64,000 nt of DNA from Botryllus schlosseri. Its lineage: Eukaryota. Position 1 is the first letter of the stretch; each line of letters opens with the position of its first letter. Where the stretch lies: contig CM119374.1 in assembly GCA_051294905.1 (NCBI GenBank), positions 20,212,001-20,276,000 on the forward strand. Direction: 5' to 3'. The translations under genes and the position numbers were made by a program. Below are positions 21,849-59,554 of the stretch, one piece after another. The notes under the pieces are model-generated. The model did no database searches, had not been told where the DNA came from, and worked only from the letters and a program-made list of their open reading frames with translations.

Positions 21849-24800
21849 ATGCTATCCGTTAAGCTTGTGGCATTAGCTGTTTTTATTGCAAATGCAGTTT
21901 CGACGAAGGTGTTGAACGTCAACTGGAAATGTAACGGTAAGTTACCTGCGTACAACCGTGCCCAGTTTACTTGTCACGCAATGCATTACTTTTTTACTTC
22001 TTCTATCCGCTGTTGGATAGTTTGGATTGACGAGGTCGACAGAATGCTCTTAAAATCGTTATATATCATTATCTTTTACAACAAAATCGTTGCTTCCCGT
22101 CGCATAAATGGTGTGTTAACTTGATCGTTACGGTATTATTTTTAGACGGCGCTCCATGCTTGAATGTCGTCCGCCCTCGCGGTGGCTTTGGGGTGGTCAA
22201 TGCAGATGAAGACTCTTACAAACTGGAAGTCTCGGTCCATCGTCCAGAAGGAGCTAGAGAAAGATTGCTGAAAAAATGGAGTTCTTCGTTCGGGACTACA
22301 TGGAACGTAGACGTCAGTTGGTTCCGGTTAATGGAAGAGGGCGTGCGGCTCTCGATGCAGCAGTGCAGGTAACCTAAGCCTATATTTCTCATAATATTGG
22401 TGTATTATTGATCCGCTTCAAACAGATATAAGCTGGTGTGTGTCGTACCCCTTCTTGATGACGAAGCCATGGCTAGGAGTGACGAAACTTCTTTCGATAC
22501 TGGACTGACAAGTCACCATTTCCTGGTTTCCGTCAAGTACGAGGGTCATAAGGCTACGTCTCAACAAGAAATCATTATTGAAAGACAAAGTTCAGGTGAA
22601 CACCCTATCAATGTATTGAACTTTGCACTTCAAAATTTTGAGGTAGTCAGAAAAAATTACCTTTTCAAATACGCTCTGTTTAGTCCAGAGGTAGTCTACT
22701 TCTACACAATTTAAAGCCATGATGTAAATTTCTACTTAATTACAAGTAGAAGTAGTGATATCCAAGATATGTCAAAACTACACATACACAATTTGGAAGT
22801 ATAGCATGAAAATTTGAGAAGTCCTCAAGAAGTAATTTAATAAGTAGATTTGGTCAAGATATCACCTATTTATCAGTAGTCGGCCGATGGTGACTACTTC
22901 GTAAATTACAGGTTGTGTCTTTGCGACCATTCAAAATGGCTTATTAGACTGCAAATTCATGAAATTTGTCGAAAATACGTTCAGTTACCCATCATACGGG
23001 TGTTATTTCCAACAGGTGTTATGGCATTTTCATCATATTCATTATAGAAACATCCCCAAACTACTTTCTATTCAAAGTCTAAAAAGTATGTAGTTTATGC
23101 CTATAATACTGCCGAGTAGAAATAGGAGTAATAAAATAATGTAAACATTTGAGTATGTAGTGAAAGTAGGCAAAACTACTTCAGTACTCCAAAAAAGTAG
23201 AGGACTTGGTTCTTGACCAGCTCTACCATCTACTTGCAGTACTTACTCTCCAGTGGTTTTTCCAGATGGGCTCCACTTCTTGAGTTTTTTATTTCGATTT
23301 TGTCAAGTTGCAAGCAGTGCTTAGACTGATTTGTGTCATATCAGTGAGTGCACTGGTCATGACAGCTAGACAAAGTAAGCCCTGTATCTACTCTCAAATT
23401 GCACCTATTTGAGCGGCCATTAAACTTTGATCGCAAAGATGCAACTTCCAATTTATAAGCTGTCCCAATCTACCAATTCAAACTACTTACTAATCATAAC
23501 TCTTGTTTCATATTTCTACTTATAGGCTTACATGATTTGTCTTGAAAAGTACTACCGGTATTACCTGCAATGAGATAGCATTTTATGGCATTACTTCTAC
23601 TTGAGAACCATCAGTGAATACTTAGGAGCTATCCTATCCTAAGCTATCAAAATAGTGCATTGGATGTACAGGTATACTGTAAACTCCCTGGGTCTCCTGC
23701 TCATAACTAGCTGAATTGCCACACCATTGTCATTCTGAACAGCAATAGTATGTACTTAAAACTTGAGTAATCCTACCAGTTTGCAAAAAGAAGTTCAGCA
23801 TTTCATATAAATTTCATTCAAGCCCATAATTGCAGTAAAATTCCACTGTAGGCCTTACAGTTTGGAATTACAAACATTATATTGCCAATAACATGTAATA
23901 TGTAGTGATGCAGACTAAGCATCTGTATCAGGATATCAATGTTTAGGATTTTGCAAGTAAATTATACTGCAATTTATAGAAAAGTTAAAGGACTAAAGAT
24001 AAACTGACAATGATGCTGTTTGAAATGAGTGCATTGCACTTGCAGTTAATTATGCTATAAACAATATAATGCAGATATTAATTCATGCATTTCCACAGGT
24101 CAATACGAAGAATACCGGCCGCCTGGAAATTCCCTTGCTCCACTCCCTTCTTCACAACAAAAGCAAGGACTACAGCAAAATTCTGAAACACCCAAAAATC
24201 CTAATGCGCAGTATCCAGATCTCCAAGAATTTGTAGACAACAAAAAACAGAAAGCCACTCAAACCCTCATCAAAAGCGGACTCTATTCAGGCTCCGACGA
24301 ACCCAATATGATTCCTTCCTTGTATGAAGTGAAGGACACACCGGATATGCTGCATGAAAACTCGGACCCCTTCAATATAAATTCGCAGGATTCGATGGGC
24401 AGTGCTGCCGACGACGGGGTGGTAGTAGTTCACTCCAAAAATGAAACTGCGCACGCAGCTTCAACTGATGTCAAAGGCTTTATCGCAGGTGAGCCCAAGT
24501 TGGACTAACTTGAAAAGTTTCACTTTTTCCAGATTAGATCATAATAAGAGTTATAGCTACACAGTTTCTTCCCAATTCCAAAGCATCAATGATAAATATA
24601 TACTGCGTCCATCCTATCAAATTAGATTACAAATTCAGAATTAGAAAGAAATGTAATAAAAAACAAGTTAAGCTCATTGTGATAAGCCTGAGAATGGCAA
24701 ATGTCTCTACACTAAGCTTGGCAGTTGTTCTGTAACGTTTTCAAGAAAAACAGGAATTATATTAAAATTAAATTAGAGCATAGAAACATTCCATAAATTA

Positions 24801-27800
24801 GATTAGAACGAGATTACCTACATTTCCCTGTAATTAGTCTGCGTTAGAGGTAATAAGTCTCAAGGTAAGTTGCTTTGAACTGCTACAATACGCATTATGC
24901 ATGGCTATTGGCAGCTCCAGCAATTAATTCCAAGTGTATCGTTGCGGCGGCAATGACAGCATTTAGTGATAACAAAGCGCATTTTCACTCAAAAGCACGC
25001 AGAGCCCGAAGAGACATTTCCCCGCAGCATATTACACAATAGCAGCTGCGATGAGGCAATACTATGAATGTAATCAGCCAGCCAAGATATCTGCAAAAGA
25101 ATACGACAGCGATTCTCTCGTTTGTCAAATCGAGAGAGCGTGTACCACAGAACTCGTGAATTTATACGAGAGTGGTAGCGGTGTTTCTCCCAGCAGAGTG
25201 GCGCAGCGGAAGCGTGCTGGGCCCATAACCCAGAGGTCGATGGATCGAAACCATCCTCTGCTACATTAGCCTCGATGGCGCAGTAGGCAGCGCGTGAGTC
25301 TCATAATCTCAAGGTCGTGAGTTCGATCCTCACTCGGGGCACACTTTTTGCCTTGTTACAGTTTGAGATTATCGCGGTTTGTTGATGATTTCATCATTTC
25401 GAAACACCGATAATATGAAATGACAGGAAGGAGTCATTCAATCAAACTCCATACTTCTACACAAAATGAGCTCCTCTTAACGATTAGTCGATTTCCCGTG
25501 ACGAGTGTCAGCCGAAAATATTCGGGTTTATTTCAATATGAATAATGAATATATCATTCAATTGTATATTGAAGAATTATACCGTAAAGAGTCTTCGGCA
25601 ACAGCAGCGTTAAAAGCCGTTAAAACACCATTTTCACACACAACAGAAATATTATTTTGTGACTCTGCTGTATGAGGAAGATCACTAGGCTGTGTGTCTT
25701 GAGCTCTTGACCTCCGCCGAACCTGACTCAGTGAATTTTGGAGCTCATTTGGACCCTGATTAAGAAACACTGGCCTGGAACATGTAGATAAGCGGCTTTT
25801 ACACCGAGTTGAATGTAACAGCAGATAACTGAAAAAGAATCCGCGATGAGAACGACGTGTGTACGTCTCTATAGATGAAATAGATATGTCAGATCGTGGT
25901 CCGGTATAATCTCCGGCGCAATCTAGCATTCCTTCATGCAGTGGAATCTGCTTGCATTTCAGATCTGTTCCTGCGACTCGGGCCGACAGCGACCGTCATC
26001 ATCTTGTTGGCGATGTCAATCCTGATGGCGTGCTTGTGCGCTTGCGGTTATAACCGAGCCGTCCAAAAGTAGGCTCTCTTTTTCAATTAACATATCCGAA
26101 ATTATTTCTATTTCCATGCATTCTAGATATCACGCGTCTGGTACGAACGATTACGTCAAACTTCGGCAAGAGCAAAGCGTTAATTCCCCGCGCGAACAAG
26201 CCCGCGCGCGAACTCCGTTAAAAAGCAATCCGCCATCCGATGACAAAAAGTCAGGCGGCACCGCCACATCGTGGTTTTGGTCCAAGCGTAAACCCGACAG
26301 TAATAACACGACCCCTTCGGTCAGCGCAGGCATACAAGAAAAATTTGCCACGTACAGCAAGGCCGTCGGTAAATTTCTCAGTTCGGTGCGCGGGGGCGAC
26401 GAAGCCGAAAATCAAACGCTGTTGAGCGACAGCGATGATGATGAGGGCGGTTCTAAATTCTTGGGTATCGGGGAAAAGATCAAAAAGACAGGCAGCGGGT
26501 TTCTGGAGCAGGTTAAGAGCAACGAGAGGTTTCAGAGGTTCAAGACCAGAATACGCAAGAGTCCGTACTTTTTTGGCGGGAAAAACGAGGCGGAAACTAT
26601 GGAGGAAGGGTGAGAATTGAGCAGCGATGTTGCTAATGTGTATTTGATCGATCTGCTGTATTCTGCAGAGGTGGTCAGTAGCATGATACTTCGGCATTTT
26701 CGGAGTACTTAAATAGATCTCGTATACTTGCATTGCCTACTCAAGAGTATGATTTTAGACCTCTTTAAGAGTTTTCAGTTTTTCAGACAAAAATGCGCCT
26801 GGAATACAATAGCATGCGATGTAGGATAGAGGGTTTAGAAGGTGTAAATTAAGCTATAAAAACTAACGCTTAAGACAGACATTGAGGGGAGTGGACCAGG
26901 TGCTTGCATTCCAACGTCAATGGCGCGCACAACTCTGGATAGTGTTTCCAAGTCAGCTGGATTCTGAGGGACGACGGGTGTATTAGATTATAGGTACACG
27001 GGAATGGAGATGACACGCAGGGTATCCTCATTTACCAATCTTCACAGCTCTTCCATTTAGTTTTGCCGCTGCTTTATTTGAGGAAATCATGTATCATTGT
27101 CAGTCTTATCCATATGCCCTGGCATGTCCGCGTTAGGGTGACAATCATGATTATATATATCACCACAAGCAGACTTCCGCATCCTTCAATAGCGACTGTT
27201 TCATTTGCAGACGATACGCAATGGGCAACACGAACGTAGGCTGGTCAGAATTGATATGCGAACGACTGCTTCAATGCGTGACAGTACTCCTTTGTCCGTT
27301 CACGTACATTTACCACTACACGCGCGATTGCTACGGCGCGTGGCGTCGAGGCAAGGACGCGGAAAGGCTCGACAAGAAGAACGCTAACCCGCGAGAGTTC
27401 ATGCCCAGCAGGGGGCCGCTTACTTCGACTTCGAGCAGCGACGACAGCTCTTCCGACGAGGTCAATGTTTACAGGAAGGAGAGCGAGAGAAAAGGAAAAA
27501 GCGTTTCGTTTTCTCTTGGACATGATCGCACCAATGAAAATAAAACTAAGGTACAGAGCTCGAAAGAAGGCAAAAGTACAGGAGACAAGACCGCGACGGG
27601 ACAACAGAAAAAGGCGCGGGAACGGGTCACTCCGAAAACGGATATTAGCGGCAGGTTCAACAGCGCGCATCCAATCAAAATCTTCCGGGACTCGGGTCAA
27701 GGGAGCTCGTACGGCGGAAACAGGGATAGAGTGATATATCCGTCTTGCGGTACGTCTGCTTCCGTTCGGGACCAGAGCGGAAGTGATTTGAGTCGCCGGG

Positions 27801-30800
27801 AATCGCAAAACACCGAGCAAGACGAGCATCCACCATGCGCAGTAAGTATAATTGCCTTTTTCGGAACTGGAAGTATCATTGCAACGACGATTGCTTTGAC
27901 CATCTTTGACATAAAATTTTATATTTAGGTTCCTATGCGTCCATGCACTCCAACAAACACCAGGAATTCGAGAGAGCCACCTTCTGACGTGCATTGTCTT
28001 CCGCCACTCCCGAACCAGCGTTATAATCGACGCGGTCTTCATATCGAGTCAAGGCCAGGCGGCAAAATACCACCTCCAACACGTTCGGAATCGAGGAGCT
28101 TGGAACGACCTGCACTACCCCCTCATCTGGCCCCTAGAATGTCGCGAACACCGCCTCCTATAAGAACGCCAAGGTCTTCGTCTTCCTCAGAAGCCATCCA
28201 GCATCTGAGATTGCCCGGTAGCTCCACAAGTTCAACCGGTTCAACTACATCTTCCGATGGTTCCAGAAATTCCAGCTCTACGCAGCATGTGGGAGACGCA
28301 AGGTGAGTATGATTTTATGCATATAAATGTACAATTGAATAATGCATTCATATTGAAATAAACAGGAATATTTTGGCAGGTAGACAGGTACGAGTATAAT
28401 CGTCAGCAACTAGTAATGAATTCAAAAGACCTTTTAATATCGACAGTCTCTCAAATTCTTTACTAGTTGCTGACGATTACCCTTGAACGAGTGTAAACCA
28501 AAAATATTCTGGTTTATTTTGATATGAATATATTATTCAATTGTATTATGCAGTTCTGTACCTCCAAGGGTCTTTTCAATAACATCGATGTATGCCTTGT
28601 TTTTAATTAACAAGACTTTAAATTTTAACAGCGCTCACTCCGACAAGTCCGCTCTGGAGCGAACGAAGGAATACTTCAAGCGAGAGAACAAGCACATGAA
28701 CGACCTGCTACGAGTGTGGGAAGCCAAAACGAGACCGCGGAAAATGGTGATAGAGGAAGGCAGAGGAAGATCGCGCTCTCGGATGTGGCTCTCACATCAA
28801 AGAAGCAGGCGCCGACTGCTGTGCCTGCAGCAAGAGAACCAATTTGGGAACAGCTCGGCCTCCAACGGTGAGAGAATAACATCGTCTCTCGTAGTAGGAG
28901 AGTTTGATGGCCCCTTTCCCTTCTAATTCACAGCGAGCGCGGCTGACTTCGAATCTCACGCTTCTCAAGACAGTCCGAGGTCTGTTCTAGCGGATGTGCC
29001 GCAGCCGATTCTCACTTTAGGAAACAGGTATTAGTTATTGACGACATTACGGAAGTGTGTTTGTGTACCTAATGCGTTTCTTTGACGTTTATCGCAGGTT
29101 GCCAAGGCCAAGAGCGCACCAAGTTTCACAAGCGTCCAACGCGGGCGAGATATCCTCGCATGGAGCGTCGGTTACAAGTCAGCTGCCAAAGCCTATTCGG
29201 TAATTTCAACTTTTATGGTTTTAGAACTAGTGTGTGTGCCGTTTATCGGAGAGGTCAGGTATATTGTTATTAAGTGATTGCTAAGTTTGCGCTAAGCCGG
29301 CAGTTTTCGTTCTTCCTTCGTTGGTGAAACTGGTTTTCCCGACATTTCAGCATGTGACTTTATAGCCTGAAACTTACCCTTAAATTAACTCGAACCCTTA
29401 CGCTAATTCGGCCATCATGCTCAAGTGTCGCATGTCTCAATACCATATGCTGATATGTCTACGGCTGGTGACACTACATTACTGGTCCAGCAGGAGACCT
29501 AAACGCAAGGGCTTCGTTTCACCCTTCATTGACATCAGATTAAAGTTTTAGTCGCGCACATGATATGCAGTAGTAATTAACATCTCTCCAATCATGATAT
29601 ATATTATTTCAAGCTCAAAAAGTCGGGAACACAGGCCTCGAAGCGGCGTACCTCAAAACGCTCTCTCCGACAAAGCGAGTAAATCATTAAGCCGAGAAGA
29701 GGATGAAGCAGAAAATTACTGCATGGAATCCGACCATTCTGACGTCAGCATCTCGTCGATATCGTCACGCTCGTCCGATCACGTCGGAGATGGAAAATCA
29801 TCAGTCAGCCTTTCGCTCTCAAACAGTGTTACATCATTTGTGCAACCGCGGAATGAGGGCGCAGCCTCTCCGCCAAGTGTCGATAGCGGCTTGGTTAATC
29901 AGGTGGATACCACTGCCGAATACAAGAAAGATTTTAGACACGAAGAAAATATACAATGTCAGAAATTGAATCGCAGTAACGCGGAAAGAGACATCAAAAA
30001 AAATATCAGACCCAATTTATCCAACACCCCATCGGTTATGTCACATTCATCCGTAAATCAAGCGATTCTTCAGTCACCAGTTAGTGAAACTCACGTTAGT
30101 GATGTGCACAAAGATGTTGACACGCTTCAAAATGGTAACGCCGCACAAATCTCAACTGTTGCGGCTGACGCAAGTTTAGAGGCCATCTCTCTACAACCAA
30201 ATAGTCCAATCTCGAAAATCGACGACGTGCCGAGTTCTCCGCAATCGCCAGGCGGAAAGGAATTCGTTGGCGAGAATCCAGTCAAACGCACGCCGTCATA
30301 CTGCCCGCCAGTGCCGATACGAACTACCTCACTTCATTCGCAGTCGTCGGGAAAATATAACATAACGCCACCGCGTTCTGTAGCTATTGAGATTCCGGAT
30401 GTTATGGAGACAGTGTCAGAGATTTATGGGAATGATACAGTACGCGCGCTGGGTAGATCGACGCCTGGTGTATTAGTCGAATGCTCTTCTGATACGTCAG
30501 GGCGCGACGCTAATGTTGATTCTAACGGAGCTAAAGCCGCATCAGAATGCATTGAGAAAATAACTTCTCGAAGTAAAATCCCGAATGTGAGCAGCAGCGC
30601 CGTGATACCAGGAAAGTCCGTTGAAGCCCGGCAAGATTCAGTGCAGCAAACGGCCTCACGAAAACCAGCCAGTCGTTTCGCGGACAGCGCTCTGAGAAAG
30701 CCGAAGTCTTTTCACATAAACTCAGCGTCATCAAGGCATGCAGTCATGGTACCGTCTGGACTCACAGTCGAAAACGAATGCTCGCGGCCCAGACTAACCC

Positions 30801-31327
30801 GTGATGTAATAGTTAATCGGCAGTCACGTGACCTCGTTTATTCGGATAAAGGCGGAAAATTGAATATGACCGATGATAATAATAACCCTCCCACACGCGA
30901 CTCTTGTAAGGTTGTGTCGAAACTGAGTGAGTATGGCGATATTGCGGTTGAAAAAAATGCCGGATCTCAACTTGATCGTGAGGAATTATCAACACCCCCC
31001 AGTTCGCCGTTATCAGTGATTGTACCGCCGCTGGATTTCACTGATTCCGAGTCCAGCAACGGCGATAACGAATACTTATCGCTACCCAACTCGCCGTGTC
31101 TCCACCCGGACGAAACCGACTTGATATCGACAATGGACGATTTTAACGCGCCGGCCAGCCCGCGATTTTACACGCTGCACCCGAATACGTTTAAAAAACA
31201 TCCGCCCGATCGACCCACGCCTAGGACGGCGCTGCGGTCCGCGACGGACAAGTTTTTTTACGAGGACGACTACGAGTCGTTCTCTTCTAGCGATGACAAC
31301 GATGAATTCTGGAAGGTGAACGTGTGA
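21849..31327 (+). CDS. Uncharacterised type-I single-pass membrane protein (signal peptide, ~280-aa ectodomain, TM, ~1200-aa Ser/Pro-rich tail), 12 exons, up to 1536 aa
   Basis: Exons 21849-21936, 22146-22368, 22426-22595, 24099-24488, 25963-26068, 26127-26609, 27211-27841, 27929-28302, 28632-28867, 28934-29027, 29098-29199 and 29614-31327. All 11 introns are GT-AG and in phase (4611 nt). Signal peptide MLSVKLVALAVFIANAVST; TM TATVIILLAMSILMACLCACGY. It could instead be two genes split at 26613/27221. Confidence 0.72.
25269..25341 (+). tRNA. trnM-CAT: tRNA-Met (CAT), elongator type
   Basis: 73-nt cloverleaf with acceptor GCCTCGA/TCGGGGC+A, anticodon loop CT-CAT-AA and T arm GTGAG-TTCGATC-CTCAC, plus internal A and B boxes. 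Closely resembles eukaryotic elongator tRNA-Met. Confidence 0.96.
25345..25349 (+). terminator. RNA polymerase III terminator (T5) of tRNA-Met
   Basis: TTTTT lies 3 nt after the discriminator base. Confidence 0.75.
28330..28545. mobile_element. Foldback MITE family L in intron 8 of the orphan gene
   Basis: Inverted arms TACAATTGAATA..TTCATATTGAAATAAAC..AATCGTCAGCAACTAGTAA. Related copies at 52481-52631 and, as a half copy, about 25490-25620. Confidence 0.7.
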
Positions 31328-31472
31328 GGTTTACAATCTCGGTGTGAGCGTTGGGCTGTGCAATATTTTATTCGGTCGCTGTGATTTCTCAGGCTGAGCC
31401 TTCTTTTTTGCCTTTTACTTTTATAATAAATTTTGTCTAACAACGATAAGGGCGTTGACAGCACGTGTGTAG

Positions 31473-44300: not shown

Positions 44301-47300
44301 CGAAATTGTAGGCAAAACGACGGAAGATATTGATTTTATGGGATCATTTGATTGTCTCAGTTGATACATTTAGCGACGTTTAAAACGTCAATTTGTACTT
44401 CAGCATGGTGGAATTGATGTGACCCGATTCGTCGCTAGGTATCGTGTACAAGTACATTAATATAGGCTATCACTTCATCGAAATATAGGGTTGAAATTAT
44501 CAATATGCCGTCACGTGACGTCATGAGGTTCACGTTCGCGTTCACACAGAACCTTTCAAAAAGGTTCGCGTTCACACGAACCTGAACCTTTCAGAGGTTC
44601 ACACCATCCCTACTATTTAGCTTCATTTATGCCGATTTTCACACGAATCTGTCCATTATCTTAGCTGTAAGAGCTGTAAAGGAGGACGAAATGCCCAAAA
44701 GAAGGACATTTAGCCTTCCTCGGAGGACATTTTCAAAAAACCTGAAAAATGAGGACATATGGTAAGTGATAACCCTATTGTTGAGCGACTATAGAAAAAA
44801 AATGCGAGGAAATCACAGGAGCGTGAGTGTGTGACCATCTACCGGCGTTTGATAACGATCATAGATAACGAACATACGCCTCAGCCGCGTGCGTATATTA
44901 TATTTCTGTTTACGAAACAGCAAGAAATTACTATTCGCATCTGCTTGTCCAACCGTGCAGCCACGTGCTGCGCCTCTATCCGTACGCTGTAGGTTAGTAA
45001 TCTATAGTTTGATCGGTTTACATTTTCACGCACGATCAGGCAATTCCGCACGGAAAATGTTGGGAATATTCGACACGTTTCGAAAATGGTTGGACTTACC
45101 CGTTAACAGAGGTGGCCAGTAAAGAAGTTATTTCACTTGTCTAGCTCTTCAAGTCGATGATGATATTAGACTAGTATTTGTACGTCTAATTGCAGTTTTC
45201 AGTTTTTGGGCAAAACTAGACCAAGAATACTTACTTTTTACTCACTTGGAAATAGGTTCTTCTACGTCTACTTGAGTAGAAATTGACGGCGTTACTTCTA
45301 CTTCTACTTGAGTACCGACGGCGACTACTTTGACCACCCTTGCCCGTTAATTGGTTACGCTGAATCTATATGGGATGGCACCGTCCTAGTCCACGGACTT
45401 GACATTTATACAATGCTTCGGGATCATTCAGACATCGAAATCTTTCTCGCATATTTCGATTATCCTCAACATCTTGCGCCCCATGCAGATTATTTTGTAG
45501 ACAGTGACGAAAGCTTACCTAGGAGATTCAGGAACGAAGAAGAATGTGACGAGATAGGATCCGGGCAGAAGGCTGAGGCATATTGCTAGGTGCCTCCAAT
45601 CCCGAATGACCATGGCGAAGACCGGCAAAGTGGTGTGCGATAGTGCAGTCACTAATGTTGCAAATACCGTGGCGCCAGTTCTGCTATTTGTCGGGGTGAG
45701 TTCAATTACTGAAATTGAATTGTATGATAGTGAAAGTCATAGTTAGATAGCTATATACTAGTCCATGCTCAAGATTACTGGACCATGACTGACCGATCGA
45801 TCTCGCCATCTATGACATGCCACCTCATTTCTTGTTGCTTGCTATTTTCTATAATATATTCTTTACTTTTCATTCAGTGTGCATGCCTCGTCTTTACATC
45901 GCGTAGGACCTAGGTCAAGGTAGGTGTCTGATTCCATAAACTACTCCAAGTCGCTTCGACACCTTCTATCATTTCATTGTATTGCATTTGTGGTGTATTG
46001 AACTGATAAAATTGCTAATAAACCAATGATGATGATGATGATGATATAGGGGGCGATAGTTTGATTGTATTGGATTCTGTTACGACATCGTTTGCGTGTC
46101 GGTTAACAAAACGTGCAGTTGTGGCGAGAAAGAATGAAGTACTGACCATGAAGAAACGCTTACTTCGGACTCGATATCATTTACTTTTAACCTTTACCGA
46201 AACCAGTAGTTTCCGTTCGATATTATGACCTGTCCATCGTCAATTTGAAGGATGAACCTATAGCCTCGCGGGTAGTTTCACAGGTCAAGGCCGCTTTGCG
46301 TGTTATTCGGCAAGTCGGGGAGCACGAAACCATAACAAATATTGGATACGCATTTACGGCGACAGTTTTGTTGTCGCGGTGCTGAAACATATAATTAGAG
46401 CAAACTAAGGTGATGCATCTATACCTATATGACGCTCGGTGAAGGCGTGCCGTGATATTTCATTCGCCTGGAAACTTACCGTACGTAAAATACGCAACAT
46501 AACACGGGACCGATCCGATTCCAACTATCGTCCTCATTGCAATATAAACTTCGTAAGATGGCGAAAAGGCTACCCCAAGTCCCGCCAGGATGGTAGCGCA
46601 ACACGTAACGAGCATGCTGACCCTTCTCCCGAACCTATCGCACACGAAACGATTAACCGAACAACCACCGGCGAAAACAAGCGACAGGATCATACAACAT
46701 ACCAGTCCATCATAGGTCCTATAATCAGTGATCCGACGAGTACGCCGAGGAAGTACAAGGAGACAGCCACCGAATCCAAAGTTACTCGATTACAAACGAG
46801 ATCCCACTGAAAAGAATAGCAACACTGATGAATTACTGCGAATCCAGTTGGTTATGGCATACCTCTGATACAGTTGTCTTATCGTAGTACGTAGTATCGT
46901 AGATGTAACCATGATCACAAGGTATTGTACTGTTCGGAGATTCCGTTACGCACGATAAATTCCCGGATGCAGCGCACATGCTCATATTAACGTCATATCT
47001 TGAGCAGGAATCGTTTTTCTAGTAAATCGAACAAAATAATTTATAACATGCATCTTGCGTTCGTAGCGGGATGCATTTATTATTTTTCAAAGACAGAGTC
47101 TTTATTTTCATCCAACCAATATACATATCAAACAGACGGCAGTGATGGTGGTACAGAAAATATGCATGCCCAGTATTTGGTATTACACAGGAATGATCGA
47201 TACGATCTTGTATAGGTCGACTAGTCTGATCACACCCGCATCAAACAGGTACACTTGTCTCTATACAGTCTGACTGTAAATAAGGTTAGTTAAAAAAAGG

Positions 47301-57704: not shown

Positions 57705-59554
57705 ATGGATTGTGATCTCTGAGCAGTTTCATGCTTCTTAGTATTTACTATTACTTACCATAGGTAAAGTAACAAATATAGCACGGTAGAGCTGACATCC
57801 CAACTACCACTCTCATTGCAATATAAACCTCATACGACGGAGAAAATGCTACACCAAGCCCTCCCAAAATGGTAACGAAACAGGCAACGAGCATGCTTAC
57901 CCTCCGTCCAAACCTTGAATTGAATGGAAAACATTAAAAACAACAGCCAAAACAAGTAACAAGATTTGTCAATATACCAGTCCATCATCGGCCCTATAAA
58001 CATTGATCCGATAAGAACTCCGACAAAATACAAGGAGATAGCAACAGAATCCAAAGTTACCCGATTGCAAACAAGGTCCCACTGCAAATAATTGAGCATG
58101 CCGCAAGGTATGAATGTATTTATACATTTGTTATACCTCCGACACAGTTGTCCTCTCGTAGTACGTCTTGTCGTAAATGAAGCCGTGATCGCATGGTATT
58201 GTGACGTTCGCTGATCCCGTAACACATGACAGATTTCCGTAAGCAGCGCACATGCTTAAATCATAGTCATATCTGGAGCAGGGGTCATCTTCCTATTATG
58301 CAATAGGATAACACAAAACCGATCCGGTGAGTACAGCAAAATATAAATTTCAGACAGCATAAATGAATTATAATTATAATTATTCTTGTTCAATTGTTCA
58401 TGCATGATATCCTCATATGCTCACTGCTCACATGGCATTTGAGGGGCATCATTGTGTAGTCTGTGTTAACTACACGTCACAATGAATCCGTGACGTCAAC
58501 GTGTCGTTGACAAATCCACTCCTGGTCTTACGCCTATGGATTGGATACCATTCGATTCTGACACACGCGACTTGATAGAGATACTGGCCCTGGCAATCCT
58601 AGGCGGCATAGGATGTGAGCAGTTCGCACTGTGCAGTGTGCAGTACGCTGGTGCAGTAAAGAACGTAGTTATCGGTACAAATGTGAAATCTGAAGTAGGG
58701 TTGGGTAAAATTGAGTAGGACTACCTGAGTGATTCGATTCTGAATCACGTGTTACGCTTCGAGTCGAGTCGAGTATTCGAGTATCACTCGTCATGGCGTC
58801 ACAACACAATGTACTATGTCAAAGTTCAAATATGTACCTTTTTATGCCACCAGAAAGAATATAACGTATGTTATCCGTCACATTAAAGATACTTTGGTAT
58901 TATTTCGACATTACCGATTTCATTGCACTTCTTGACAACGTTGTGTGATGATCATGACTTCAGAAATGTGTTATTTCCAGTAACGATCGTAGCTTTGTAC
59001 TATGTCTCGTATGCTGCGACACGGCTAATCAAGGCTTCAAGGCTTTCTCAGTGGAAAATAGTATCAAAGGTGTGATTCTCGTTGGTAAATTAACTTTCAG
59101 TTGCGAGGAGCGTATTATTTCAGTACTCGAAAAATTGTCTTTTGGTACTCGAATCAATATAATTATTACTCGATTCAGATTCGAGTACTCGAATCACTGT
59201 TCCCAGCCCTAATCTCAAGCAGTTAAAGACATACCGGTACCATCAGACGCGATATTTCTTCATTTGTCAACTCTGGATATAGCGTGCTGTTATCCAACAG
59301 AGGTATGAAGCATCTGTTGACAGATATTCCTTATCATCGATATTTTTCCATTCGTTTACTTTAAAGATAACCGAGGAATATATTAAAAACATAATCAACC
59401 ACTTCACCGACCTGAATTTTGGTACTGCGCTGAAGATTGCCGCGGACTGACTCATAAATGACGTCCCGAACGTTAGTGCAGTTACCGTAACAATTACCCC
59501 AATCTGGTAGTAGCTAATTCCTCCCAAGGCCTCCTGCAACCCGTCAAGATCCAT
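50264..59554 (-). CDS. SLC22: SLC22-family organic cation/anion transporter paralog 2 (MFS), 13 exons, 574 aa
   Basis: Exons (-) 59554-59412, 59313-59235, 58292-58137, 58081-57978, 57913-57759, 57567-57378, 53837-53708, 53335-53185, 53113-52937, 52061-51953, 51892-51793, 50560-50403 and 50336-50264 (1725 nt, intact). Same motifs as paralog 1. Confidence 0.93.
52481..52631. mobile_element. Foldback MITE family L
   Basis: Long inverted arms AATTGAATAG..TTCATATTGAAATGAACCCAAAA..TGACACTCGTCAGGGGTAATC and mirror image. Homologous to 28330-28545. Confidence 0.75.
54192..57098. mobile_element. Family E element (inverted) with nested element F
   Basis: TAGAGATGGTGCGAAC...GTTCACACCATCCCTA with perfect TSD GTTAAGAC. 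Confidence 0.9.
54345..56291 (-). mobile_element. Charlie/Buster-like hAT deletion derivative F nested in E
   Basis: Perfect TIR CAGTGCTTTTCAACCT and perfect TSD GCCTATAT. A degenerate minus-strand remnant VFWIGVQNRF*DL..DVLVQIP..(L)AEK at about 54570-54680 resembles the hAT dimerisation domain. Confidence 0.88.
57665..57700. repeat. (AG)18 microsatellite
   Basis: Uninterrupted AG run in intron 5 of SLC22 paralog 2. Confidence 0.97.
58696..59211. mobile_element. hAT MITE family H
   Basis: TIR TAGGGTTGGG/CCCAGCCCTA, TSD ATCTGAAG/ATCTCAAG (7/8), and GATTCGAGTACTCGAATC-type palindromic subterminal motifs. Confidence 0.8.

What the first reader, a model, noticed from the sequence alone, without database searches (positions are those of the whole stretch)
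21849..31327. Orphan single-pass receptor-like gene with a tiny ectodomain and a ~1200-aa disordered cytoplasmic tail
Twelve exons splice in phase into 1536 aa. The protein has a signal peptide, a ~140-aa beta-rich domain with four Cys (WKCNDGAPCL...QQCRYKLVCV), a ~130-aa low-complexity stalk, a TM helix ending in a Cys cluster (ACLCACG, possible palmitoylation), and a very long Ser/Pro/Arg-rich tail with no recognisable catalytic domain. I recognise no family. The architecture suggests an adaptor-type receptor or membrane scaffold and is the strongest candidate for an undescribed system in this window (inference).
Basis: partly seen in the sequence, partly recalled or inferred. Interest (0 to 1): 0.75.

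Follow-up and report, generated by a model that had tools for sequence, protein, structure and literature searches.

The report
Uncharacterised sea-squirt membrane scaffold gene
This looks like a real, single-copy sea-squirt gene for a membrane protein with a small outer domain and a very long floppy inner tail carrying a few strongly conserved short motifs. It fits no named protein family, and I could not get RNA evidence that the outer part and the tail belong to one transcript.

Summary
The 12-exon, all GT-AG, in-phase model is reproducible.

The architecture is as described:
- a signal peptide
- a roughly 145-aa ectodomain with four Cys
- a roughly 145-aa polar acidic linker
- one strong TM helix ending in CLCAC
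- a roughly 1,210-aa Ser-rich tail that composition predicts to be disordered
- an AATAAA 98 nt after the stop

Pfam, PDB sequences, protein-language-model look-alikes and a phmmer search of 1.84 billion proteins name no family. The gene is single-copy.

It is neither a strict orphan nor featureless. Exon 7 has two relatives in a public assembly, at 83% and 42% identity. Two motif islands (FMPSRGP...SSSDEVNVY and PKTDISGRFNS..P.KIFRDSG) are 83-88% identical in the distant relative, against 17-23% in the flanks. A Cys-bearing 45-residue helix precedes them.

The exon 6 to exon 7 link, which joins ectodomain to tail, is therefore unproven. A two-gene reading keeps about 20%. The ectodomain could only be tested exon by exon.

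Best reading: a tunicate-restricted type I membrane scaffold. Interest is modest.

The parts
21849..21936 (+). Exon 1: start codon (A at -3) and signal peptide, residues 1-16, plus the first ectodomain Cys (C28). Donor is GTAAGT.
22146..22368 (+). Exon 2: first half of the ectodomain (residues 30-103, C34 and C103).
   Evidence: Single copy in the genome. No Pfam, PDB or Atlas family.
22426..22595 (+). Exon 3: second half of the ectodomain (residues 104-160, C109). It follows a 57-nt intron.
   Evidence: Single copy. No PDB hit.
24075..24488 (+). Exon 4: polar, acidic linker (residues 161-298). It holds one N-x-T sequon at N283 and is predicted disordered.
25963..26068 (+). Exon 5: transmembrane helix (residues 306-327 = 25983-26048) ending in the Cys cluster CLCAC (26031-26045).
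26127..26609 (+). Exon 6: basic, Ser/Lys-rich juxtamembrane region (residues 334-494). A TGA overlaps the donor (GG|GTGA), so an unspliced message would stop here at 495 aa.
   Evidence: No homologue found.
27211..27841 (+). Exon 7 (alternative acceptor at 27193). It holds a predicted helix at 506-551 (27242-27379), conserved island 1 at 558-582 (27398-27472) and conserved island 2 at 636-659 (27632-27703).
27929..28302 (+). Exon 8: the Ser/Pro/Arg-rich segment (S 19%, P 17%, R 13%). The donor AAG|GTGAGT matches the consensus at 9 of 9 positions.
28632..28867 (+). Exon 9 (provisional). The frame is fixed by exon 8's strong donor, but the codon score does not separate two frames.
28934..29027 (+). 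Exon 10 (provisional; alternative donor after 28979).
29098..29199 (+). Exon 11 (provisional; several in-phase alternatives exist).
29614..31327 (+). Exon 12: 571 codons of Ser-rich tail. It ends in an acidic Ser cluster followed by DEFWKVNV and the stop codon. The acceptor is a weak AAG.
   Evidence: Single copy. No relative in 1.84 billion proteins.
31425..31430 (+). AATAAA polyadenylation signal, 98 nt after the stop codon.

Best explanation
One protein-coding gene, restricted to sea squirts or a subgroup of them, encodes a type I single-pass membrane protein of about 1,540 residues.

Parts, in order:
- A cleaved signal peptide.
- A small folded ectodomain with two probable disulfides (C28/C34 and C103/C109).
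- A flexible acidic linker holding that domain about 145 residues from the membrane.
- A TM helix whose cytoplasmic end carries three Cys, likely palmitoylation sites.
- A cytoplasmic tail of about 1,210 residues that is mostly disordered.

Proposed mechanism: the tail acts as a membrane-anchored docking platform. A conserved Cys-bearing helix probably lies on or near the membrane. Two invariant motif islands, and perhaps the C-terminal acidic-aromatic end (DEFWKVNV), recruit cytosolic partners, probably under control of Ser phosphorylation.

Shown: the exon structure, the sequence features and the block-wise conservation.
Inferred: the splice joining exon 6 to exon 7, the topology, lipid modification, partner binding and any signalling role.
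For: - All 11 introns are GT-AG and in phase.
- The codon score favours the model's frame and is negative in the six introns tested.
- The ORF lengths are far beyond chance.
- A strong signal peptide and one strong TM helix are present, with slightly more positive charge on the C-terminal flank.
- Exon 7 is under selection. The helix plus the two islands are 93/95 identical in the close relative, against 69/99 in the flanks. In the distant relative the islands are 21/24 and 19/23 identical, against 9/53 and 7/31 in the flanks.
- Similarity to the distant relative begins at window 27206, at the predicted acceptor.
- Residue 498, the only candidate internal start Met, is Asn in the distant relative. 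On that relative's contig a 170-aa same-strand ORF abuts the exon-7 ORF.
- There is no AATAAA or ATTAAA between 26613 and 27210.
- Transcriptome-sized assemblies from several studies hold parts of both halves: X1-X5 hold 0.11-0.20 of 21849-24488 and 0.22-0.38 of 26000-31400. Genome-sized runs hold 0.80-0.94.
Against: - No read or cDNA shows any junction.
- The run shares cannot be assigned to exons, and those runs are not on record as RNA.
- Exons 9-11 and the exon 12 acceptor have in-phase alternatives.
- The 5' 52 codons of exon 7 carry no codon signal of their own.
- Exon 6 and exon 2 found no relatives, so conservation is shown for exon 7 only.
- The function rests on architecture and short motifs alone.
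- The tail has only four YxxPhi motifs, no NPxY or PPxY motif and no enrichment of RS dipeptides, so no specific pathway is indicated.
Confidence: 0.5

Rival explanations
1. Two transcription units, or two isoforms, rather than one giant protein. The first is a 495-aa type I membrane protein from exons 1-6, ending at the TGA that overlaps the exon 6 donor. The second is a separate protein of about 1,047 aa starting at the ATG at 27221 (M-G-N-T...). It would have no signal peptide and would be held at membranes, if at all, by the Cys-bearing helix or by lipid modification.
For: - The stop codon lies directly at the exon 6 donor.
- An ATG sits 10 nt after a strong acceptor at 27211, a layout that would also suit a trans-spliced downstream gene in a tunicate (the trans-splicing point is my own knowledge).
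- The close relative's ORF also starts at M-G-N-T.
- In-phase joining of one junction has a 1-in-3 chance.
- There is no RNA evidence.
Against: - That Met is Asn in the 42% relative, and the residues before it there read like a translated pyrimidine tract.
- A 170-aa same-strand ORF abuts the exon-7 ORF on that relative's contig, leaving no room for a terminator and a promoter.
- No canonical polyadenylation signal lies in the 600-nt gap.
- The frame is open for 25 codons upstream of the acceptor only, as expected for an internal exon.
Confidence: 0.2
2. A fast-evolving member of an already named family of single-pass proteins, for example a Shisa-like, FAM171-like or lectin/Ig-like receptor. 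Its ectodomain escaped detection because it could only be searched as two exon pieces of 73 and 56 aa.
For: - The domain is split by an intron, and every search used pieces.
- The search for homologous proteins cannot see proteins longer than 1.75 times the query, so full-length relatives were out of reach.
- The only length-free search used the tail, not the ectodomain.
Against: - No Pfam family reached E <= 1 on either ectodomain piece, apart from a chance bacterial enzyme match at E 0.1.
- There was no PDB sequence match better than E 0.1.
- The language-model recognition score was 1668, below the 2300 that 91 in 100 proteins of known families reach.
- The C-x5-C ... C-x5-C spacing is not that of Sushi, EGF, Shisa or C-type lectin domains (my own knowledge).
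Confidence: 0.15
3. The second hydrophobic segment (510-528) is a true membrane span. The protein would then cross the membrane twice, and the roughly 1,000 residues after it would be extracellular, as a mucin-like Ser/Pro-rich ectodomain, not cytoplasmic.
For: - There is a hydropathy peak of 1.43 at 510-528.
- AlphaFold predicts one continuous helix at 506-551 with pLDDT 73-87, as it often does for membrane helices.
Against: - The peak is below the usual 1.6 threshold, and the segment contains Glu, Arg, Gln and Pro.
- Net charge is +3 on the C-terminal flank and 0 on the N-terminal flank. That is the wrong way round for a span leaving the cytosol.
- In the distant relative, the most hydrophobic 19-residue window (which falls in the equivalent segment) holds three charged residues.
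- N-glycosylation sequons after it are not enriched: 10 observed against 11.2 expected.
- The conserved islands look like phosphorylation or docking motifs.
Confidence: 0.08

Closest known systems
Transmembrane adaptor proteins (LAT, PAG1/Cbp, LIME, NTAL, PRR7); comparison from my own knowledge
   Same: - One TM helix followed at once by Cys residues that are palmitoylated in those proteins.
- No catalytic domain.
- A disordered cytoplasmic tail that works through short docking motifs.
- PAG1 and PRR7 end in a PDZ ligand. This protein ends in V-N-V, which fits the class II pattern.
   Different: - Those proteins have no signal peptide, ectodomains under about 20 residues, tails of 100-400 residues and many Tyr-based SH2 motifs.
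- This protein has a signal peptide and about 290 extracellular residues with a folded four-Cys domain.
- Its tail has about 1,210 residues with only four YxxPhi motifs.
- There is no sequence similarity to any of them.
Shisa / CKAMP44 family; comparison from my own knowledge
   Same: - A signal peptide and a small Cys-containing ectodomain.
- One TM helix.
- A long Pro/Ser-rich disordered tail with a C-terminal PDZ-type ending.
   Different: - The Shisa ectodomain is a Cys-knot with 6-8 Cys in a fixed pattern and has a Pfam model.
- Here there are four Cys spaced C-x5-C ... C-x5-C about 68 residues apart, and no Pfam match.
- Shisa proteins have 200-550 residues.
FAM171 (astroprincin) family; comparison from my own knowledge
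   Same: Type I topology, a modest ectodomain of a few hundred residues, one TM helix and a cytoplasmic tail of several hundred disordered residues of unknown function.
   Different: The FAM171 ectodomain has its own Pfam family, which none of the exon pieces matched. The tail here is about twice as long. No similarity was detected.

Membership tests
Transmembrane adaptor proteins (LAT/PAG1 type) | Very short extracellular part (under about 20 residues) and no cleaved signal peptide | tested here: not met
   Signal peptide 1-16 and about 290 extracellular residues
Transmembrane adaptor proteins (LAT/PAG1 type) | Juxtamembrane Cys motif at the cytoplasmic end of the TM helix | tested here: met
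   C322, C324 and C326 (CLCAC) at the end of the 306-327 helix. Palmitoylation itself is not testable here.
Transmembrane adaptor proteins (LAT/PAG1 type) | Several conserved Tyr-based SH2-docking motifs in the tail | tested here: not met
   Four YxxPhi motifs in 1,211 residues. None lies in the exon-7 segments shown to be conserved between species (helix 506-551 and the two islands); the other three lie in exon 12, for which no relatives are available.
Shisa / CKAMP44 | N-terminal Shisa Cys-rich domain recognised by its Pfam model | tested here: not met
   No Pfam family at E <= 1 on ectodomain exons 2 and 3, searched as separate pieces, so sensitivity was reduced
FAM171 | FAM171 ectodomain recognised by its Pfam model | tested here: not met
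   No Pfam match on exons 2, 3 or 4, with the same caveat that the search was piecewise
Any Pfam or PDB family, for the ectodomain as a whole | Profile or fold match of the complete spliced domain (residues 17-160) | not testable with these tools
   The spliced domain has no reference, and I did not type it. Exon 2 alone folded at pLDDT 48.6, which is unusable for a fold search.
Type I single-pass membrane protein (architecture class) | Cleavable signal peptide plus exactly one TM helix with the C-terminus inside | tested here: inconclusive
   The signal peptide and one strong helix (2.63) are clear. A second, weaker hydrophobic helix (1.43) is probably not a span. The topology has not been tested experimentally.

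The most novel reading that the evidence does not exclude
A tunicate-specific receptor family, in which an ectodomain of a fold not yet described is coupled to a giant phospho-regulated scaffold. The invariant islands (FMPSRGP...SSSDEVNVY and PKTDISGRFNS..P.KIFRDSG) would be docking sites for a conserved cytosolic machine. This would be a new signalling or adhesion module, possibly used in a lineage-specific process such as self/non-self or gamete recognition.
Probability: 0.1. Interest if true: 0.6.

Novelty: new variant of a known kind. Interest (0 to 1): 0.3.

Why it matters
If the single-gene model holds, this is an undescribed tunicate protein family. It would pair a small, unclassified extracellular domain with one of the longest disordered cytoplasmic tails known for a single-pass protein.

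The two invariant motif islands give concrete handles for pull-down or mutation experiments.

On present evidence it is one more lineage-restricted membrane protein of unknown function. That is common in animal genomes. It neither surprises a specialist nor opens a long-standing question.

Tried and rejected
- **phmmer of the last exon** against 1.84 billion representatives: only P0001, a bacterial repeat protein at E 1e-4, which I judge spurious. With hindsight the ectodomain would have been the better query for this single job.
- **The search for homologous proteins** with exon 6 and exon 2: blank. This is uninformative for longer relatives because of the length filter.
- **The search for related loci** in metagenome contigs with exon 12 and exon 2: nothing.
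- **The look-up of encoding contigs** for the exon 12 ORF: not on record. The contigs of P0002 and P0003 were listed without DNA, so dN/dS and neighbouring exons could not be read.
- **Weak Pfam hit to DUF7564** on exon 7: rejected. In the control genomes that family rings in Haloferax volcanii and Lactococcus lactis, over its cut-off in one of them (so it looks prokaryotic), and it has no match over its cut-off in this genome.
- **AlphaFold on exon 2 alone:** pLDDT 48.6, so I did not use it for a fold search.
- **Atlas look-alikes** for exons 2, 6 and 7: nothing usable.
- **RS-domain idea:** RS/SR dipeptides are not enriched, 34 observed against 30 expected.
- **Apparent discordance between runs** holding the 5' and 3' halves: rejected as evidence. 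The first listing seems cut off at a share of 0.20.
- **Left out:** folding or profile-searching the spliced ectodomain. The spliced sequence has no reference, and I did not type it.
Full report
**Setting.** Earlier notes on this genome describe it as a sea squirt. I did not verify that. The assembly has 495.5 Mb in 219 contigs, and the window is contig 4, 20,212,001-20,276,000.

I rebuilt the model junction by junction and obtained 12 exons:
- 21849-21936
- 22146-22368
- 22426-22595
- 24075-24488
- 25963-26068
- 26127-26609
- 27211-27841
- 27929-28302
- 28632-28867
- 28934-29027
- 29098-29199
- 29614-31327

All 11 introns are GT-AG. The phases match, and the frame is open for 4,635 nt, or 1,544 aa. 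These are an exon 7 acceptor at 27193 or 27211, an exon 10 donor after 28979 or 29027, and several options for exon 11.

Independent support from the sequence:
- A leave-one-out codon score is positive in the model's frame for 10 of 12 exons and is highest in that frame for 10 of 12; 9 exons meet both. The exceptions are exon 1 (about zero but still the best frame), the hydrophobic TM exon (negative) and exon 9 (positive but narrowly beaten by another frame). It is negative in the best frame of each of the six introns tested, those longer than 150 nt.
- A 587-codon open frame is expected 5e-9 times by chance in this window, and a 263-codon one 0.02 times.
- An AATAAA lies 98 nt after the stop.
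- No tandem repeats inflate the frame.

**Protein features**.
- Residues 1-16 form a signal peptide with A-N-A before the cut.
- Residues 17-160 have ordinary globular composition, with Cys at 28, 34, 103 and 109. That is two C-x5-C pairs 68 residues apart.
- Residues 161-305 are polar and acidic: D+E 14%, K+R 7%, Ser+Thr 17%, one sequon. The segment is predicted disordered, but its entropy of 4.02 bits is not low complexity.
- Residues 306-327 are the only strong hydrophobic helix (2.63), ending in CLCAC and followed by basic residues.
- The remaining 1,211 residues are 15% Ser, 8% Arg and 7% Pro. Every exon falls on the disordered side of the charge-hydropathy boundary.
- Exon 8 is the truly Ser/Pro/Arg-rich part.
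- The C-terminus is an acidic Ser cluster followed by DEFWKVNV. This fits both an LC3-interaction-type pattern and a class II PDZ ending. Those are pattern matches only.

Exon 7 opens with a hydrophobic, Cys-bearing segment, with a hydropathy peak of 1.43 at 510-528. AlphaFold on exon 7 alone predicts a single helix at 506-551 with pLDDT 73-87, and nothing ordered after it. I think it is not a second membrane span, for three reasons:
- The peak is sub-threshold and contains Glu, Arg, Gln and Pro.
- The flank charges (0 before, +3 after) point the wrong way.
- In the distant relative, the most hydrophobic 19-residue window, which falls in the equivalent segment, contains three charged residues.

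**Homology.**
- Pfam found nothing credible on seven exon pieces, nor on the relatives. A weak DUF7564 hit is spurious.
- PDB sequences gave nothing for six pieces or for the exon 7 profile.
- Language-model look-alikes gave nothing, with recognition scores of 1049-1668.
- phmmer of the last exon against 1.84 billion representatives found only a bacterial repeat protein.
- Exons 2, 3, 6, 7 and 12 are single-copy in the genome.
- Exon 7 does have relatives: P0002 (83% identity, 218 aa) and P0003 (42%, 234 aa). Both come from contigs of one public sample. P0003 matches only this locus in the genome, so the locus is its sole counterpart.

Conservation in exon 7 is block-wise:

| Segment | vs P0002 (identical/aligned) | vs P0003 (identical/aligned) |
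|---|---|---|
| Helix 506-551 | 46/46 | 15/46 |
| Island 1, 558-582 (FMPSRGP...SSSDEVNVY) | 24/25 | 21/24 |
| Spacer 583-635 | 37/53 | 9/53 |
| Island 2, 636-659 (PKTDISGRFNS..P.KIFRDSG) | 23/24 | 19/23 |
| Remainder 660-705 | 32/46 | 7/31 |

This is the signature of short functional motifs embedded in a fast-evolving disordered region. It shows that this exon is translated and under selection. Island 2 contains R-F-N-S-x-x-P, which fits a 14-3-3-type phospho-motif by pattern (inference).

**The weak point: is it one gene?** The tail joins the membrane part through a single splice, 26609 to 27211.

Points against one gene:
- A TGA overlaps the exon 6 donor.
- An ATG lies 10 nt inside exon 7.

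Points for one gene:
- The splice is in phase.
- No AATAAA or ATTAAA lies in the 600-nt gap.
- Similarity to P0003 starts at 27206, right at the acceptor.
- The candidate start Met is Asn in P0003.
- On P0003's contig a 170-aa same-strand ORF abuts the exon-7 ORF, overlapping it by 11 nt. That is the layout expected for an exon 6 equivalent separated by a very short intron. I could not read that ORF, and exon 6 found no relatives.

RNA evidence failed. Indirectly, genome-sized runs hold 0.80-0.94 of the sampled words of 21849-24488. Transcriptome-sized assemblies from several studies hold up to 0.35, and fully exonic words make up 0.30 of that stretch. Runs X1-X5 also hold 0.22-0.38 of 26000-31400. 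This suggests that both halves are transcribed, but it cannot show a junction.

My odds are about 0.9 that the gene is real, about 0.7 that it is one transcript, and about 0.5 for the overall scaffold reading.

**Verdict.** It belongs to no named family, but it has relatives in other organisms. Its tail carries conserved motifs and a conserved helix. The link between ectodomain and tail, the fold of the ectodomain and the function all remain untested. It is best filed as an undescribed, lineage-restricted type I membrane scaffold of modest interest.

Noticed in passing
window 25269-25342 (+), inside intron 4: A tRNA-Met (anticodon CAT) gene, or tRNA-derived element, scores 63 bits against Rfam tRNA. 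I left those places alone.
   Followed up: partly
window about 22719-23225, inside intron 3: An interspersed repeat. The genome search raised 778 candidates and scored 40, and the copies on many contigs are 66-93% identical.
   Followed up: partly
window 46463-46789 (-) and 57833-58255 (-): Two minus-strand exons both match the same part (positions about 46-116) of the Pfam Sugar_tr/MFS transporter profile. Two tandem MFS (SLC22-like) transporter genes therefore probably lie downstream.
   Followed up: partly
P0002 and P0003 (contigs of sample SRR25569784): Both relatives of exon 7, at 83% and 42% identity, come from one public sample, while this genome has a single copy. Either the sample is a mixture of species, or a relative keeps a paralogue that was lost here.
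   Followed up: partly
window 26608-26613: The exon 6 donor overlaps a stop codon (GG|GTGA). Retention of intron 6 would therefore give a 495-aa membrane protein lacking the long tail, which is a possible short isoform.
   Followed up: no
window 27245-28042 (-): A 265-aa open frame runs antisense to exons 7-8. The cross-species matches are in the + frame, so this is probably a by-product of composition.
   Followed up: no
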